Shown: positions 645 to 63,534 of the stretch, in pieces
Position numbering within the stretch: the first letter of the stretch is position 1
Layout: each line of letters opens with the position of its first letter
Source of the DNA: Podarcis erhardii
Lineage: Eukaryota
Direction: 5' to 3' (one strand)
Assembly: GCA_964252035.1 (NCBI GenBank)
Contig: OZ176208.1
Length of the DNA stretch: 64,000 nucleotides
The notes under the pieces: model-generated
Told to the model about the DNA's origin: nothing
Database searches by the model: none
The model's input: the letters and a program-made list of their open reading frames with translations, nothing else
Made by a program: the position numbers and the translations under genes

Positions 645-814
645 CAGTGGCGTAGCGTGGGTTGTCAGCACCCGGGGCAAGGCAAGTAATTTGTGCCCCC
701 TAACCCATGGATTTGCGCCCCCTAACCCGTGGATTTGCGCACCCTAACCCTAACCCCCAGATGTTGCGCCCGGTGCGGCCGGCCCCCCCCTGCACCCCCC
801 ACGCTACGCCACTG
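645..814 (+). mobile_element. Non-autonomous hAT element (MITE), short cargo-free member of the family also at 30146
   Basis: TIRs CAGTGGCGTAGC / GCTACGCCACTG. Perfect 8-bp TSD GTAAGAAA (637-644, 815-822). Internal 22-bp tandem unit containing CCCTAACCC. Confidence 0.92.
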
Positions 815-29379: not shown

Positions 29380-30130
29380 AATAATGAGGCGCAGAGGGAG
29401 GGAAATGAACGAGAGACTCCGAGGAGCGCTTCCCCATTTCTGCGGGCCGCTCCTCCAAAGCGAATGGGGGATCCCCCCCCCAGTCCCTCCGACGAGGGGG
29501 GGGGCTGTTTCGGAAGAAGGCTTCCTAGGCCGCCCTGAGGAGCCGGCCAACCGCCAACTCCCCGCCCCGCCAAGCGCGCCAAGCGGCGGGCGGAGGCGGA
29601 ACCCTCGCGCGCAGTCCCGGCTGGCGAGGGGACGCCTTTGGGCGCGGGACGCCTTCCGCCTCGCCGCCCGCCCGCCCGCCCGCCATGGCGGTGGACATCA
29701 CGCTGCTCTTCAAGGCCAGCGTGAAGACGGTGAAGACCCGCAACAAGGCCCTGGGGGTCCCGCTGGGCGGCGGCGGCGGCGGCAGCGGCAGCGAGGGGCC
29801 CCGCGACGAGGCCCAGGCCCTGCTCAAGCGCGGCGGGCAGCGCGCCAAAGGCGACTTCTCCAGCCGCGCCCGCGAAGTGGTGAGGGGGGCTGGCAGGGGG
29901 GCGGGCGGGCGCCAGGACGGCGCCAGTCGAGTCCAGAAAAGAGCCTCTGGCCGCGACTCCAGGGGCAGCAGCTCAGCTGGGGCTTCTTACTATCTTGAGG
30001 CTGCGTTTGGCTGTGCGGAAGTGAAGAAGCGGCACTCTGCACATGCTCGAAGTGCTCCTTTCTTCGCAGGTCGCCAGAGAGGGGGGTCGGAGTTCTGCCT
30101 GGGTAGGATCTGGTGTGTTGAAAGAAAAGA
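29380..30130 (+). promoter_or_regulatory. STX18: CpG-island promoter / first-exon region of STX18
   Basis: Very high GC and CpG density. GC boxes CCCCGCCCCGCC (29561-29572), ETS-like CGGAAG (29511 and 30016), no TATA box, and strong Kozak context CCCGCCATGG. The TSS is not determinable from sequence. Confidence 0.8.
29685..29879 (+). CDS. STX18: Syntaxin-18, coding exon 1 (65 aa)
   Basis: [25 protein letters not shown]...[11 protein letters not shown] matches the vertebrate STX18 N-terminus. Donor GTG|GTGAGG at 29880, phase 0. Confidence 0.97.
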
Positions 30131-30145
30131 AAGAGGGGTGGGAAG

Positions 30146-30654
30146 CAGCGGCGTAGCGGGGGTTGTCAGCACCCGGGGCAAGGCAAGTAATTTGCGCCCC
30201 CTAACCCCTAACCTGCCGCCACTGCCAGCTTCTTCTTGCTGCCGCCTGGGCTGGGGTATTTACGGTAAGGTAGCCACGGCGGCGGCGGTGGGTCCGTGTC
30301 AGGTGATCTGAGGCGAGTTGCCACTGGCGCTGCCGCCCAAACGACGCCACTTGCCCAGAGGAGGAGGAGGGCAGAGAGGCGAGGACCCATGCCCAGCCGC
30401 TGCAGCAGCAGCGGCGGTGCTGTGAGGAGGGGCTGCCTGGCGCGCCCTCCGCGGCCCTGACACGCGGGGAGCCGCTACCTGCCGGACGCCTTCAGCCCGG
30501 ACGCACGCACAGCTCGTCGGTTCCGCGAGACATGGGGCTCTGCTACAGCCTGCGCCCGAGGCTCTTCGGCGACTCCGGAGGCGGCGAGCGCGCCCCCCCC
30601 AGATGTTGCGCCCGGTGCGGCCAGCCCCCCTGCACCCCCCACGCTACGCCACTG
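30146..30654 (+). mobile_element. Non-autonomous hAT element carrying captured GC-rich host sequence (Pack-type)
   Basis: TIRs CAGCGGCGTAGC / GCTACGCCACTG. Perfect 8-bp TSD GTGGGAAG (30138-30145, 30655-30662). Both arms match the 645-814 element, but 30214-30592 is extra. Confidence 0.9.
30532..30591 (+). pseudogene. GNAL: Captured fragment resembling the start of the GNAL XL isoform (XL-Galpha-olf) exon 1
   Basis: MGLCYSLRPRLFGDSGGGER versus the mammalian XL-Golf start as I recall it, MGLCYSLRPLLFG (12 of 13 identical). It is truncated by the right arm of the hAT element. Confidence 0.7.
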
Positions 30655-30897
30655 GTGGGAAGTACTGCACGTTGGAGCATATTCTTTGCGGATCTGATCC
30701 TCTTGCATTCCCCACCTACCCAGCCAGTGGTGACAGTGTAAAGGAGGATGGGGTGTTAATTGTTTATTTTTATACCGCCTTTTTAGCCCAATGGCCCCCA
30801 GAGTGGTGAACAACATTAATCCATATTATTACAAAAAGGTACAATACTGTACATAAAAACACATCTATCAAGACAATATAAAATAGCGGCAAGGTTT

Positions 30898-39163: not shown

Positions 39164-41330
39164 CTTTTCATTTAGTTGGTAATACTGCAACCTGTCTGTC
39201 GCTCAGTTCTTTATTTTCCCCCACGTCTTCAGTTTGATTTCTCTCTCCGATAAGTCCAGTAAATCTCTATATATTGCCCATTGTCATAGAATCATAGAAT
39301 CATAGAGTTGGAAGAGACCACAAGGGCCATCGAGTCCAACCCCCTGCCAAGCAGGAAACACCATCAGAGCACTCCTGACATATGGTTGTCAAGCCTCTGC
39401 TTAAAGACCTCCAAAGAAGGAGACTCCACCACACTCCTTGGCAGCAAATTCCACTGTCGAACAGCTCTTACTGTCAGGAAGTTCTTCCTAATGTTTAGGT
39501 GGAATCTTCTTTCTTGTAGTTTGGAACCATTGCTCCGTGTCCGCTTCTCTGGAGCAGCAGAAAACAACCTTTCTCCCTCCTCTATGTGACATCCTTTTAT
39601 ATATTTGAACATGGCTATCATATCACCCCTTAACCTCCTCTTCTCCAGGCTAAACATGCCCAGCTCCCTTAGCCGTTCCTCATAAGGCATCGTTTCCAGG
39701 CCTTTGACCATTTTGGTTGCCCTCCTCTGGACACGTTCCAGTTTGTCAGTGTCCTTCTTGAACTGTGGTGCCCAGAACTGGACACAGTACTCCAGGTGAG
39801 GTCTGACCAGAGCAGAATACAGTGGCACTATTACTTCCCTAGATGCTATACTCCTATTGATGCAGCCCAGAATTGCATTGGCTTTTTTAGCTGCCGCGTC
39901 ACACTGTTGGCTCATATCAAGTTTGTGGTCAACCAAGACTCCTAGATCCTTTTCACATGTACTGCGCTCAAGCCAGGTGTCACCCATCTTGTATTTGTGC
40001 CTCTCATTTTTTTTGCCCAAGTGCAATACTTTACATTTCTCCGTGTTAAAATTCATCTTGTTTGTTTTGGCCCAGTTCTCTAATCTGTCAAGGTCGTTTT
40101 GAAGTCCTCTGGGGTGTTAGCCACCCCTCCCAGTTTGGTGTCATCTGCAAATTTGATCAGGATGCCCTTGAGTCCATCATCCAAGTCGTTGATAAAGATG
40201 TTGAATAAGACCGAACCCAAGACAGAACCCTGTGGCACCCCACTAGTCACTCTTCTCCAGGATGAAGAGGAACCATTGATGAGCACCCTTTGGGTTCGGT
40301 CAGTCAGCCAGTTACAAATCCACTGAGTGGTAGCATAGTCAAGACCGCATTTTACCAGCTTCTTTACAAGAATATCATGGGGCACCTTGTCAAATGCCTT
40401 GCTGAAATCAAGGTAGGCTACATCCACTGCGTTCCCTTCATCTACCAGGCTTGTAATTCTGTCAAAAAACAAGATCAGGTTCGTCTGACATGACTTATTT
40501 TTCAGAAATCCATGCTGACTATTGGTGATCACAGCATTCCTTTCTAGGTGCTCACAGACTGTTTGCTTAATGATCTGCTCCAGAATCTTCCCTGGTATTG
40601 ATGTCAGACTGACTGGGCGGTAATTATTTGGGTCCTCTCTTCCCCCCCTTTTTGAAAATAGGGACAACATTTGCCCTCCTCCAGTCTGCCGGGACTTCGC
40701 CTGTTCTCCAGGAATTCTCAAAGATGACTGCCAGTGGTTCTGAGATCACATCTGCCAGTTCTTTTAATACTCTTGGATGCAGTTCATCTGGCCCTGGAGA
40801 CTTGAATACATCTAAACTAGCCAAGTATTCTTGTACTATCTCCTTAGTTATTCTGGGCTGTGTTTCCTCTGCTGAATCATTTGCTCCAAATTCTTCAGTT
40901 CGGGCATTGTTTTATTTGTCGGAGAAGACTGAGGCAAAGAAGGCATTGAGGAGTTCAGCCCTTTCTGTGTCCCCTGTTTGCATTTCACCATCTTCTTCTC
41001 TGAGTGACTGTCCATATTAGTCTTCTTCAATGCTATAGCTTCTATTGGTGATAACCACAAGAGTGTTTCCCTCTCCAACAGATTTTTATATTTCTCCCAG
41101 ACTCTGTAGGTATTCCTTCTTACCACATGGTTCTCGAAGTTCTTCTATATATATATTAGCATTTCCATACCATAAACACGGGTGCCAGCCAAAATTAATA
41201 CCATGACCTTCCAAATCTAATAGGTGGTTTTTTTAATAGCAAAATTCATTCCTTTAACCAACATAAACATGCCGCCTCATAATATAATTGTAAATTGGCA
41301 ATTTCTTATTTAGGTACGTATCTTCTGATT
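39164..41330 (-). mobile_element. Internal L1 ORF2 fragment (39164-39281 plus 41013-41330) interrupted by a young CR1
   Basis: Minus-strand translation across frameshifts: LYYEAACLCWLKE..LLDLEGHGINFGWH..NHVVRRNTYRVWEKYKNLLERETLLWLSPIEAI..|..WAIYRDLL..LQYYQLNE. I recognise this as post-RT squamate L1 ORF2. It is bounded by a direct repeat ACAAGTTGA. Confidence 0.6.
39284..41008 (-). mobile_element. Young 5'-truncated CR1 LINE (1.7 kb) with disrupted ORF2 reverse transcriptase
   Basis: (ATTCTATG)n tail at 39284. ORFs 40080-40721 and 39364-40056 give the CR1 RT ([35 protein letters not shown]). A frameshift near 40630 and small deletions near 40105 and 39840 break the ORF. Confidence 0.96.
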
Positions 41331-61310: not shown

Positions 61311-61751
61311 GGACGGAGTGCCTGTTTGCTTGCCCAGACTCCCAGCCGCTTGCAGCACTCAGTATTGTGCTCACCCCATCCTTCAAAAGGAAAGTGCAGG
61401 GGGCATGTCACATCTTAGCTCTTGCCTAGCTGTGCCTTTGCCTTCTCATGTAACGGCTGATTCGTGCAACCTGTGACTTGCCTTATGTACTGTTCTAATC
61501 TGAAAATGAACACCTTTAGCAAAACTGGAGTTCCAGTCCCTCGTGGGTCTGGCAGTGGTTGACAGAAGGTAGGCCTAAGTTGGTCTGCCTTGCTGGAATT
61601 AGTGCATCAGTGCAATTTGAGTGCTCTTTGAAAATAGCCCTCACTGTGCATTTGATGTTCAAGTATCATATCTTGGGCACATAAAATGCTTTTCTTTTCC
61701 CTTTCATTTTTAAATCCATTATTTACATTTTGCTTTTTTATTATTATTCAG

Positions 61752-61819
61752 GTCAATAACATCGGGAAACTGAAAGATTTTCTTCTGCAGCACAGGAAAG
61801 ATTATATTAATGCCTACAG
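61752..61819 (+). CDS. STX18: Syntaxin-18, exon 2 (68 nt)
   Basis: TTCAG|GTC...TACAG|GTAAGT. Encodes VNNIGKLKDFLLQHRKDYINAY(S), matching STX18 (human ISHIGKLRDFLLEHRKDYINAYS). Confidence 0.96.
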
Positions 61820-62450
61820 GTAAGTATTGCAATAGGAACAGTGGGTGGGTGGTGAAGAAGGGAAACATTCTTGGACTGATGCTCTCTCCCTTTGTGGAAA
61901 GCTCTTGTGCTAAATTTCCACTCTGATTACTGAACCTGTTCTCATAGTCAAAGAATGTTAAATTGGTTTCCCTCTGAACAGGAAGAATAAAAGGTTGTGG
62001 TAAAAAAGAAAGCTGTGTTTGTTGAATGAAAAGAAGTTTTGGAACCTTGTCTGTTGTGATGGATTGAGATGGCTGTGGATGCATGGATTCCAGTTCATAC
62101 CTACAGCCTATGCGCTAGGAAGTTGCTGCCGCCACCACCTCCAACCAAAAGACCACAGCCACTTGTGGGATTAAGCCTGCACATGGAATCTGGGGGGCAA
62201 CCAAGCTACCTGCCGCCACCTCGCGTCACTGCCAAGGAAGTCTTTGGTCTGCTTCCCTTTTCGGCTTCGTGCCGTAGCCTGTAGTGTAGAGGTGCTGCCT
62301 TGCTCATGTGGAAAAGCTCTTTGAGCTTGAAAGTCACTTCAGTCAAAACCCAGTGTTCATTTAAAAAAAACATAAACTTGTGGTCTGGGTAAGATAGTAA
62401 AAGAGGAATAAGAAATGGAATGTTGAAGGAAAATGTTGAAGATTATTTCA

Positions 62451-62917: not shown

Positions 62918-63326
62918 TGAATATCTAGGCAGTTTCTAAGTGCAGATATGCCCAAGCAGAGATGAAGGACAACTGCTTGAAGTGTGGAAGAAAAAGCTTA
63001 TGGTTTCCATAGTGGGAGGGAAAATATCTTTTGAACACACGCACACACATATATGTACCCTGTTTTTTCACTGACAGGCATTCAAGGCGGCTTATAGATA
63101 AAAATAAGAAATAATCTCTCTTTAATTCTTTTTAGTCACGTGTTAGAATGGTTAAACCACATCACCAGGTGGCAGTGTTCATCTTTTGGATTTAATAGCG
63201 GTATTTGTTTTATGAGAAGAGGTAACTAGTGTGGGAGCAATACCCTGACACTAGTTGCAGTGGACTTAAGGAAACAGAAGCGGAGTGTGGTGAAATAAAA
63301 TTAACAACACTGACTGTTTCCCCCAG

Positions 63327-63442
63327 CCATGTCATGTCTGAGTATGTGCGGATGACAGACACTGAGCGAGACCAGATTGACCAGGATGCCCAGATCTTTA
63401 TGAGAACATGTGCTGATGCAATTCAGCAACTCAGAACAGAAG
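63327..63442 (+). CDS. STX18: Syntaxin-18, exon 3 (116 nt)
   Basis: CCCCAG|C...GAAG|GTAAAT. Encodes [38 protein letters not shown], and phases are consistent with exons 2 and 4. Confidence 0.97.
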
Positions 63443-63534
63443 GTAAATTGATTAAAATAATGTGTGAGTTGTGCCAGATGTTTAAAGCGTTTATCTGCGA
63501 AGCGTAATGCTTTTGTGTTGTTGTTTTTTTTTAG

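What the first reader, a model, noticed from the sequence alone, without database searches (positions are those of the whole stretch)
30146..30654. Pack-type hAT transposon carrying a captured host gene start (GNAL XL-like) inside STX18 intron 1
Seen: both arms match the 170-bp element at 645-814, the 8-bp TSD GTGGGAAG is perfect, and about 380 bp of CpG-rich non-repeat-looking DNA (30214-30592) is inserted at the centre. Its right end is an ATG (30532) opening MGLCYSLRPRLFGDSGGGER. Established (from memory): the XL isoform of Galpha-olf (GNAL) begins MGLCYSLRPLLFG, 12 of 13 identical. Capture of gene fragments by TIR elements is well known in plants (Pack-MULEs) and much less documented in vertebrates. 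Inference: this family picks up CpG-island/first-exon DNA from other genes and deposits it elsewhere, here into another gene's CpG island. That would be a route for shuffling promoter and 5' UTR modules, and could generate RNA complementary to the GNAL locus.
Basis: partly seen in the sequence, partly recalled or inferred. Interest (0 to 1): 0.88.

Follow-up and report, generated by a model that had tools for sequence, protein, structure and literature searches.

The report
Lizard hAT transposon carrying GNAL start
A small cut-and-paste transposon in the first intron of the STX18 gene carries about 370 bases copied from the start of another gene, the long "XL" form of the olfactory G-protein gene GNAL; this way of moving gene starts around a genome is known but rarely seen in vertebrates.

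Summary
Window 30146-30654 is a 509-bp non-autonomous hAT-type element. It has 17-bp terminal inverted repeats, a perfect 8-bp target-site duplication (GTGGGAAG), and two arms 95% identical to the 170-bp element at 645-814. It lies 266 bp into STX18 intron 1, on the same strand as STX18.

The ~370-bp interior comes from the 5' end of GNAL. Its ORF start, MGLCYSLRPRLFGDSGGG, is 18/18 identical to the N-terminus of annotated "G(olf) subunit alpha isoform X1" of lacertid lizards. At the DNA level, two blocks match the XL first-exon locus of two birds in the same order. One is the ATG plus ~55 nt (92-93%, E 1e-20). The other is a conserved upstream block (81-82%, E 1e-11 to 1e-14) with a TATA-like box and an E-box. 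The transposon arms are absent from the bird and frog GNAL loci.

This is a Pack-TIR (Pack-hAT) element, a kind already described in animals (Tan et al. 2021). It is therefore a new member of a known kind. That survey found no Pack-TIR in its only lizard genome.

The scan's first-stage notes report the same GNAL cargo in at least seven other windows of this genome. If true, the element moved after the capture. I could not check those notes. The species' own GNAL locus could not be fetched.

The parts
30138..30145 (.). Left target-site duplication GTGGGAAG
   Evidence: Identical 8-mer on both sides of the element. It fits the hAT target pattern nTnnnnAn (established knowledge).
30146..30213 (+). 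Left arm of the hAT MITE, including the left TIR at 30146-30162 (CAGCGGCGTAGCGGGGG)
   Evidence: 95.2% identical to 645-706. The TIR matches with 2 mismatches. The arm ends inside the family's internal 22-bp repeat zone.
30214..30531 (+). Cargo, non-coding part: 318 bp from upstream of the GNAL XL start codon (promoter-proximal region and/or 5' UTR)
   Evidence: Collinear with bird GNAL XL loci. 30246-30317 is 82% identical to L001 9761-9834 (E 5e-14) and 81% to L003 1207-1267 (E 1e-11). A weak third block, 30427-30453, matches L003 1321-1347.
30246..30317 (+). Conserved upstream block within the cargo: TATA-like TATTTA (30257-30262) and E-box CAGGTG (30300-30305)
   Evidence: Conserved between this lizard copy and two birds. 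GTCAGGTGATC is also present upstream of the frog XL exon. The promoter role is inferred.
30532..30585 (+). Cargo, coding part: first 18 codons of GNAL XL (MGLCYSLRPRLFGDSGGG)
   Evidence: 18/18 identical to lacertid GNAL isoform X1 (P0026, P0127, P0128, P0130, P0135, P0136). 92-93% nucleotide identity to two birds (E 5e-20 and 2e-20).
30586..30654 (+). Right junction (about 4-7 nt of unclear origin) and right arm of the MITE, including the right TIR at 30638-30654
   Evidence: 30596-30654 is 95.1% identical to 754-814. The TIR is a perfect match.
30655..30662 (.). Right target-site duplication GTGGGAAG
645..814 (+). Cargo-free 170-bp member of the same MITE family, with TSD GTAAGAAA at 637-644 and 815-822
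   Evidence: Perfect 17-bp TIRs, an 8-bp TSD, and a 22-bp internal tandem repeat of 2.8 copies at 689-750.
29685..29879 (+). STX18 exon 1 coding part (65 codons), with donor GTGAGG at 29880
   Evidence: The ORF starts [24 protein letters not shown] and ends SRAREV. The donor was read. Exons 2 and 3 lie at about 61.8 and 63.3 kb.

Best explanation
This is a Pack-TIR (Pack-hAT) element: a non-autonomous hAT-family MITE whose centre has been replaced or expanded by about 370 bp copied from the 5' end of GNAL.

The copied piece runs from about 320 bp upstream of the XL-isoform start codon to codon 18. It includes a promoter-like block conserved between lizard and birds.

The most likely history has three steps.
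1. A double-strand break or stalled replication occurred inside the MITE's internal 22-bp tandem-repeat zone. It was repaired by switching template to the GNAL XL CpG island (gap filling or FoSTeST-type capture).
2. The chimera kept both TIRs, so a hAT transposase supplied in trans could mobilise it.
3. One copy inserted at GTGGGAAG, 266 bp into STX18 intron 1, in the same orientation as STX18.

Shown here: the TIR/TSD anatomy, the arm homology, the GNAL origin of the interior, and the location.

Inferred: the capture mechanism, movement after capture, and any promoter activity of the cargo.
For: Anatomy:
- The arms are 95% identical to a cargo-free family member.
- The TIRs are 17 bp and the TSD is a perfect 8-mer. 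Both TSDs fit the hAT pattern nTnnnnAn.

Origin of the cargo:
- A phmmer search of 1.84 billion representative proteins with the first 40 residues of the ORF returned one start-to-start match, a thrush XL-type G-alpha first exon (P0003, E 9e-4).
- Relatives of that exon are named G(olf) subunit alpha isoform X1 across vertebrates.
- Lacertid proteins share MGLCYSLRPRLFGDSGGG exactly. The tegu, agamids, iguanians (anole, Sceloporus), geckos, varanid and anguid differ at residues 14-18.
- Nucleotide matches to two independent bird loci are collinear and significant.
- The MITE arms have no hit in the bird or frog GNAL loci.

Known precedent: hAT is the commonest Pack-TIR carrier. Multicopy Pack-TIRs favour GC-rich and 5' UTR DNA, for example hAT-N8_XT with the CAPSL 5' UTR (PMC8277862).

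Mobilisation: first-stage notes of this scan list the same cargo in at least seven other windows of this genome, in SLC6A12, DST, CDKAL1 and FLVCR2 introns among others. These notes are unchecked.
Against: - The species' own GNAL XL exon and flank could not be fetched. Identity between parent and cargo, exact breakpoints and junction microhomology are therefore unknown. Every squamate GNAL gene model looked up spans more than 100 kb and was returned without DNA.
- Multi-copy status rests only on unverified AI notes. Within this window there is a single cargo-bearing copy.
- No autonomous hAT element or transposase is present in the window.
- Between the two conserved blocks, the cargo aligns poorly to birds. 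That is expected at this divergence, but about half of the cargo is assigned to GNAL only by collinearity.
Confidence: 0.85

Rival explanations
1. In-situ, transposition-independent capture. An ordinary MITE inserted into STX18 intron 1 first. A later break inside it was repaired here using GNAL DNA as filler. This copy would then be unique and never moved as a chimera.
For: Most animal Pack-TIRs are single-copy and arise this way (PMC8277862). Only one cargo-bearing copy is in this window. The breakpoints lie in the internal region of the element, as in gap-filling cases.
Against: Scan notes report the same cargo between hAT ends in at least seven other windows, in introns of different genes. 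Those notes are unchecked. Gap filling usually copies DNA from less than 15 kb away on the same chromosome, and no GNAL sequence lies elsewhere in this 64-kb window.
Confidence: 0.1
2. Composite mobilisation (end bypass or macrotransposition). Two separate MITE copies flanking the GNAL XL exon start were cut out together, using the outer TIR of each.
For: This is a recognised route for TIR-element transduction, named as the end bypass model in PMC8277862.
Against: The two arms are complementary halves of one element: 68 bp carrying the left end and about 62 bp carrying the right end. They meet in the internal repeat zone and are not two full elements. The bird and frog GNAL loci carry no such elements, though the lizard locus itself was not seen.
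Confidence: 0.03
3. The interior is ordinary family sequence or a chance look-alike. Either this is the normal internal sequence of a longer hAT element, or the GNAL resemblance is a low-complexity GC-rich coincidence or an assembly chimera.
For: The cargo is GC-rich with simple GGC/CAG runs. Several of the weak BLAST hits are of that kind.
Against: There are two non-repetitive, collinear matches to two bird GNAL loci at E 1e-11 to 1e-20, both on the same strand and in the same order as in GNAL. The peptide match starts at the start codon of both sequences and is 18/18 identical to lacertid GNAL. There is no transposase-like ORF. The perfect TIR/TSD frame argues against misassembly.
Confidence: 0.02

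Closest known systems
Pack-hAT-N8_XT of Xenopus tropicalis, which carries the CAPSL 5' UTR (Tan et al. 2021, Nat Commun 12:4280, PMC8277862)
   Same: A non-autonomous hAT element with both ends intact. A few hundred bp of GC-rich 5' gene sequence sits in its centre (291 bp there, about 370 bp here). It transposed after capture, shown there by three distinct TSDs.
   Different: The host is a lizard, and the only lizard genome in that survey yielded no Pack-TIR. The cargo also includes the start codon, 18 codons and a conserved promoter-like block. If the scan notes are right, copy number here is well above the 3-5 copies reported for any vertebrate multicopy Pack-TIR.
Pack-MULEs of rice and other plants
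   Same: TIR transposons carrying gene fragments, with a bias toward GC-rich 5' ends of genes. Many families are multicopy, and they can form chimeric transcripts.
   Different: Different superfamily: Mutator with 9-bp TSDs and long TIRs, versus hAT with 8-bp TSDs and 17-bp TIRs. The host is a plant. No expression data exist here.
Ssk-FB4 family of Drosophila melanogaster (PMC8277862)
   Same: A captured host gene segment with 5' upstream DNA, amplified by repeated transposition. The FoSTeST model was proposed for it.
   Different: The carrier is a Foldback element and a nearly whole gene was captured, with coding potential retained. Here only 18 codons were captured.
Non-autonomous hAT/hobo families of Anolis carolinensis that incorporate extraneous DNA (Novick et al. 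2011, PMC3014272)
   Same: Lizard hAT non-autonomous elements whose interiors are unrelated to any transposase and include foreign DNA.
   Different: The filler described there is mostly other transposon fragments, not a host gene's promoter and first exon. None of the TIRs visible in the part of that paper's table that I read matches CAGTGGCGTAGCG.

Membership tests
hAT superfamily, non-autonomous element (MITE) | 8-bp target-site duplication | tested here: met
   GTGGGAAG flanks 30146-30654 and GTAAGAAA flanks 645-814. Both fit nTnnnnAn (established knowledge of hAT targets).
hAT superfamily, non-autonomous element (MITE) | Short terminal inverted repeats beginning with CAG | tested here: met
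   The 17-bp TIR CAGTGGCGTAGCGTGGG is perfect in the reference copy and 15/17 on the left of this copy. There are four matches in the window against 0.04 expected.
hAT superfamily, non-autonomous element (MITE) | An autonomous partner encoding a hAT transposase with the same ends | not testable with these tools
   No hAT domain was found in the long ORFs of the window; only a LINE RT fragment appeared.
Pack-TIR (criteria of Tan et al. 2021, PMC8277862, Methods) | Both flanks cover at least 10 bp of the terminals of the TIR element | tested here: met
   62 and 61 bp at 95% identity to the cargo-free copy, TIRs included. The comparison is with one family member, not a curated consensus.
Pack-TIR (criteria of Tan et al. 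2021, PMC8277862, Methods) | The internal sequence is non-TE DNA with a unique parental copy elsewhere in the same genome (at least 90% identity, length ratio 80-120%) | not testable with these tools
   The genome is not searchable. Lacertid and other squamate GNAL gene models were too long to return DNA. Substitute evidence: 18/18 residues with lacertid GNAL XL and collinear nucleotide matches to two bird GNAL XL loci.
Pack-TIR (criteria of Tan et al. 2021, PMC8277862, Methods) | The parental locus is not itself flanked by the TE, which excludes segmental duplication | tested here: inconclusive
   The MITE reference has no hit in the thrush, second-bird or frog GNAL XL loci. The lizard's own locus was not seen.
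Multicopy (transposed) Pack-TIR | Two or more copies with the same arm-cargo junctions but different flanks and TSDs | not testable with these tools
   Only first-stage notes are available: at least seven other windows of the same genome. No sequences were available to compare.
GNAL XL (extra-large G-alpha-olf) first exon, as source of the cargo | N-terminal peptide of the XL exon, starting at the initiator Met | tested here: met
   MGLCYSLRPRLFG is shared by proteins that their sources name G(olf) alpha isoform X1, from fish to birds. It extends to 18/18 residues in Lacertidae.
GNAL XL (extra-large G-alpha-olf) first exon, as source of the cargo | Nucleotide similarity that extends into the non-coding 5' flank, in the same order and orientation | tested here: met
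   Cargo 33-104 and 313-373 match L001 9761-9834 and 9995-10055. The same two blocks, plus a weak third, match L003.

The most novel reading that the evidence does not exclude
This copy may be one of tens to hundreds of copies of a GNAL-cargo Pack-hAT. The same lizard hAT MITE lineage may also have repeatedly captured CpG-island promoters with first exons of other genes; the scan notes name CENPW, ATP1B3, SPR and RFXAP. Each capture would then have been amplified. That would be an animal counterpart of rice Pack-MULEs. It would scatter a deeply conserved promoter module and a start codon followed by the XL N-terminal motif MGLC (I take it to be a lipidation signal, from memory only) into introns of many genes. 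Some copies could then act as alternative promoters or first exons. Here codon 41 of the cargo ORF ends exactly at the TIR end. It is followed by a weak GT donor in phase 0, which is frame-compatible with STX18 exon 2.
Probability: 0.3. Interest if true: 0.75.

Novelty: new member of a known kind. Interest (0 to 1): 0.5.

Why it matters
Gene-fragment capture by cut-and-paste transposons is a major source of new gene structures in plants. In animals it is regarded as rare and almost always single-copy: 4 multicopy cases among 370 in 100 genomes, and none in the one lizard examined (PMC8277862).

This is a clean squamate example. The cargo is a promoter-proximal block conserved between lizards and birds, together with a 5' UTR and a start codon. 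It lies next to another gene's CpG island. It shows that the mechanism operates in lizards, whose hAT elements have been recently active.

If the other copies noted by the scan are real, this family would be the most amplified vertebrate Pack-TIR known. It would also be a natural experiment in spreading one promoter and first-exon module to many loci. That could be tested directly with RNA-seq, CAGE and methylation data.

Tried and rejected
1. A word-indexed protein search with the 69-aa ORF (residues 1-40) found nothing. That tool's length window of 38-120 aa excludes full-length GNAL.
2. A literature search for the peptide MGLCYSLRP and for XLGolf plus GNAL found no paper.
3. I tried to fetch squamate GNAL XL exon DNA through gene models of Podarcis muralis, Varanus komodoensis, Anolis sagrei and Elgaria multicarinata. 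All span 141-165 kb and came back without DNA. The Zootoca model P0026 is not on record.
4. A search with the lacertid XL exon (P0128:1-200) for short lizard ORFs on small contigs returned only birds, frogs and fish. Cluster listings of ten squamate GNAL proteins showed no partial model on a short scaffold.
5. An exact look-up of two ORFs over STX18 exon 1 was meant to find this locus in other assemblies and test for an empty site. Neither is on record. STX18 cannot be rebuilt from the window because only exons 1-3 are present.
6. The search of earlier findings by sequence and by place (near) returned nothing. The operators warn that a blank by sequence means nothing.
7. Frog versus cargo: only the coding start aligns significantly. 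The frog adds little beyond the motif GTCAGGTGATC.
8. Rejected: an autonomous-element interior, since there is no transposase ORF and the interior is GNAL-homologous. Also rejected: a TE origin for the GNAL exon, since that exon is conserved from fish to birds without the arms.

Full report
**1. What is at the coordinates**

The stretch 30146-30654 (509 bp) is bounded by CAGCGGCGTAGCGGGGG on the left and the reverse complement of CAGTGGCGTAGCGTGGG on the right. The 17-mer, allowing 3 mismatches, occurs four times in the 64-kb window. Those four sites are the ends of this element and of the 170-bp element at 645-814. About 0.04 matches are expected by chance.

Directly outside the ends lies GTGGGAAG on both sides, at 30138-30145 and 30655-30662. 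The 170-bp element has its own 8-bp duplication, GTAAGAAA, at 637-644 and 815-822. An 8-bp duplication, TIRs beginning with CAG, and T at position 2 with A at position 7 of both duplications are hallmarks of hAT elements (established knowledge).

BLASTN within the window gives two arm matches:
- 30146-30207 matches 645-706 at 95.2% (E 2e-23).
- 30596-30654 matches 754-814 at 95.1% (E 2e-22).

The interior has no other match in the window. It is 71% G+C with CpG observed/expected of 0.88. The downstream flank is 39% G+C with CpG o/e of 0.29.

The short element contains a 22-bp internal tandem repeat (ATTTGCGCCCCCTAACCCATGG, 2.8 copies). In the long element the left arm stops within one such unit, at 30213. 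The right arm resumes with GCGCCCCC at about 30590. Both breakpoints therefore lie in the repeat zone at the centre of the element.

**2. Where it sits**

The ORF list shows [24 protein letters not shown]...SRAREV starting at 29685. This is the syntaxin-18 N-terminus; I recognised it from memory, and the exons found downstream support it.
- Exon 1 ends at 29879, followed by the donor GTGAGG.
- Exon 2 (VNNIGKLKDFLLQHRKDYINAY) ends near 61820.
- Exon 3 ([26 protein letters not shown]) lies at about 63.3 kb.

The element is therefore 266 bp into a roughly 32-kb intron 1. It is on the same strand as STX18, at the 3' shoulder of the STX18 CpG island.

**3. What the interior is**

The ATG at 30532 opens MGLCYSLRPRLFGDSGGGERAPP..., which then reads on through the right arm.

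I ran an exhaustive phmmer search of 1.84 billion representative proteins with the first 40 residues. It returned three hits. Two are repetitive proteins that match only the low-complexity part. The third, P0003, aligns start to start (E 9e-4). P0003 is a truncated Turdus gene model whose first 155 residues end in EEREAEKEARKVSKSIDRALKEQKREYKQTHRLLLL. That is the segment that joins the G-alpha core.

I then used the natural 321-aa ORF of that bird exon as a query. This was needed to get past the search tool's length window. It returned about 200 proteins. The full-length ones (476-549 aa) are named by their sources [quoted passage not shown]. They come from birds, turtles, lizards, frogs, lungfish and ray-finned fishes.

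All of these begin MGLCYSLRPRLFG. After that the sequences differ by lineage:
- Lacertids (Zootoca, Podarcis muralis, P. raffonei, P. lilfordi, Lacerta agilis) continue DSGGG-SISS.
- The tegu has ESSGGG.
- Agamids, iguanians (anole, Sceloporus), geckos, varanid and anguid have other variants.

The cargo reads DSGGG, so it is 18/18 identical to lacertids and diverges exactly after codon 18. The source gene is therefore GNAL (XL first exon), in its lacertid form.

**4. Nucleotide evidence, including non-coding DNA**

The Turdus locus (L001) was fetched. BLASTN of the 379-bp interior against its 39 kb gave two significant hits on the same strand and in the same order:
- Cargo 313-373 matches L001 9995-10055 (91.8%, E 5e-20). 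This is the start codon region.
- Cargo 33-104 matches L001 9761-9834 (82.4%, E 5e-14). This lies about 240 bp upstream of the bird ATG.

A second, independent bird contig (L003, from a Logan assembly) reproduces both matches, at 93% (E 2e-20) and 81% (E 1e-11). It adds a weak third collinear block, cargo 214-240 (E 0.017).

The upstream block contains GGGGTATTTACGGTAAGGT and GTGTCAGGTGATC. The second motif also lies upstream of the Xenopus laevis XL exon (L002).

The cargo is thus collinear with the GNAL XL 5' region over its length. It carries a non-coding block that has stayed over 80% identical between lizard and birds. I infer from the motifs and their position that this is a TATA-like core promoter and start-site region. 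No expression data exist.

The 170-bp MITE has no hit in any of the three GNAL loci. The arms are therefore not part of GNAL.

**5. How it most likely arose and works**

The two arms are complementary halves of one MITE, with foreign DNA placed in its internal repeat zone. This is the anatomy of Pack-TIRs.

Tan et al. (PMC8277862) describe two routes. In transposition-independent gap filling, a break inside a resident element is repaired by template switching, and the result is a single-copy Pack-TIR. In the FoSTeST route, template switching is followed by transposition, and the result is a multicopy Pack-TIR.

The perfect TSD around the whole chimera fits either route. What separates them is copy number. 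The scan's first-stage notes list hAT elements with the GNAL XL start in at least seven other windows of this genome. These lie in introns of SLC6A12, DST, CDKAL1 and FLVCR2, among others. One is an "orphan" GNAL-like N-terminus that ends after a poly-C tract, which is just what the right junction looks like here.

These are unchecked AI notes and I could not see their sequences. Taken at face value, eight sightings in 689 windows (about 44 Mb) would extrapolate to a few hundred copies if the genome is about 1.5 Gb, a size I assumed from memory for lacertids. That is a rough, unverified figure. I therefore favour capture followed by trans-mobilisation (about 0.75 within the Pack-TIR reading) over in-situ filling.

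**6. Consequences at this locus (inference only)**

- The cargo is in sense orientation relative to STX18. STX18 pre-mRNA would carry a sense copy of the GNAL 5' end, not an antisense one.
- The insertion extends the CpG-rich domain by 0.5 kb. Its high CpG o/e suggests that it is young or protected from methylation.
- The cargo ORF's codon 41 ends at 30654, the last base of the TIR. The next bases, GTGGGA, form a weak donor-like site in phase 0. STX18 intron 1 is also phase 0. A transcript starting in the cargo could therefore splice in frame to STX18 exon 2. This is a one-in-three coincidence by chance and is only a hypothesis for RNA data.

**7. Comparison with what is known, and novelty**

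Pack-TIRs are documented in animals. There are 370 in 100 genomes, 208 of them on hAT elements. The median cargo is 224 bp. Exonic sequence is captured 3.2-fold more often than expected from its share of the genome. Multicopy cases favour GC-rich DNA. One frog hAT element carries 291 bp of the CAPSL 5' UTR in three places. The present element belongs to that kind.

What is new is the host and possibly the scale. The only lizard in that survey (anoCar2) scored zero Pack-TIRs, with just 77 usable TIR-element copies annotated. Only four multicopy Pack-TIRs were found in the reference genomes. The one multicopy family for which a count is quoted has five copies.

The Anolis transposon survey reports incorporation of extraneous DNA by hAT/hobo elements, but mainly other transposon fragments (PMC3014272).

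I rate this as a new member of a known kind, with moderate interest. The interest rises if the multicopy and multi-cargo notes hold up. Those notes name CENPW, ATP1B3, SPR and RFXAP first exons as other cargos.

**8. Limits**

- The decisive comparison, cargo against this species' own GNAL XL exon and flank, could not be run. The genome is not searchable here, and all squamate GNAL gene models exceed the 100-kb limit for DNA retrieval.
- The empty-site test in related lizards could not be run either.
- No N-containing stretch was involved. The window has no N.

Noticed in passing
window 30246-30317; L001 9761-9834; L003 1207-1267: A non-coding block upstream of the GNAL XL start codon is 81-82% identical between the lizard cargo and two birds. 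It contains GGGGTATTTACGGTAAGGT and GTGTCAGGTGATC. The motif GTCAGGTGATC is also upstream of the Xenopus XL exon. This is probably the conserved core promoter or start site of the XL transcript.
   Followed up: partly
window 30652-30662: Codon 41 of the cargo ORF ends on the last base of the right TIR. The TSD that follows (GTGGGAAG) begins with GT in phase 0, the same phase as STX18 intron 1. In-frame splicing to STX18 exon 2 is formally possible. This is speculative.
   Followed up: partly
window 689-750: The cargo-free MITE has a 22-bp internal tandem repeat (ATTTGCGCCCCCTAACCCATGG, 2.8 copies). Both cargo breakpoints in the long copy fall in the matching zone. This suggests a fragile or slippage-prone site where template switching happens.
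   Followed up: partly
window 39364-40721, minus strand: Two adjacent ORFs (230 and 213 aa) lie in STX18 intron 1. The second (40080-40718) has a Pfam reverse-transcriptase domain (RVT_1, E 3.5e-27). This is a decayed LINE.
   Followed up: partly
window 61656-61820 and 63226-63504: STX18 exons 2 and 3 lie near the right end of the window. Intron 1 is about 32 kb, and the gene runs off the window.
   Followed up: partly
other windows of the same genome (scan notes s1-238288, s1-263131, s1-268836, s1-220624, s1-220619, s1-229638, s1-259081): First-stage notes describe hAT elements carrying the promoter and first exon of CENPW, ATP1B3, SPR and RFXAP, several of them seen twice. If these use the same TIR family, this genome has a recurrent, 5'-biased, multicopy gene-capture process.
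   Followed up: no
Varanus komodoensis GNAL locus (no DNA returned): A minus-strand gene model with Metallophos plus RVT_1 domains overlaps the GNAL range. The Metallophos domain fits MPPE1, which I recall (from memory) lies next to GNAL in human; the model looks like MPPE1 fused to a retroelement ORF.
   Followed up: no
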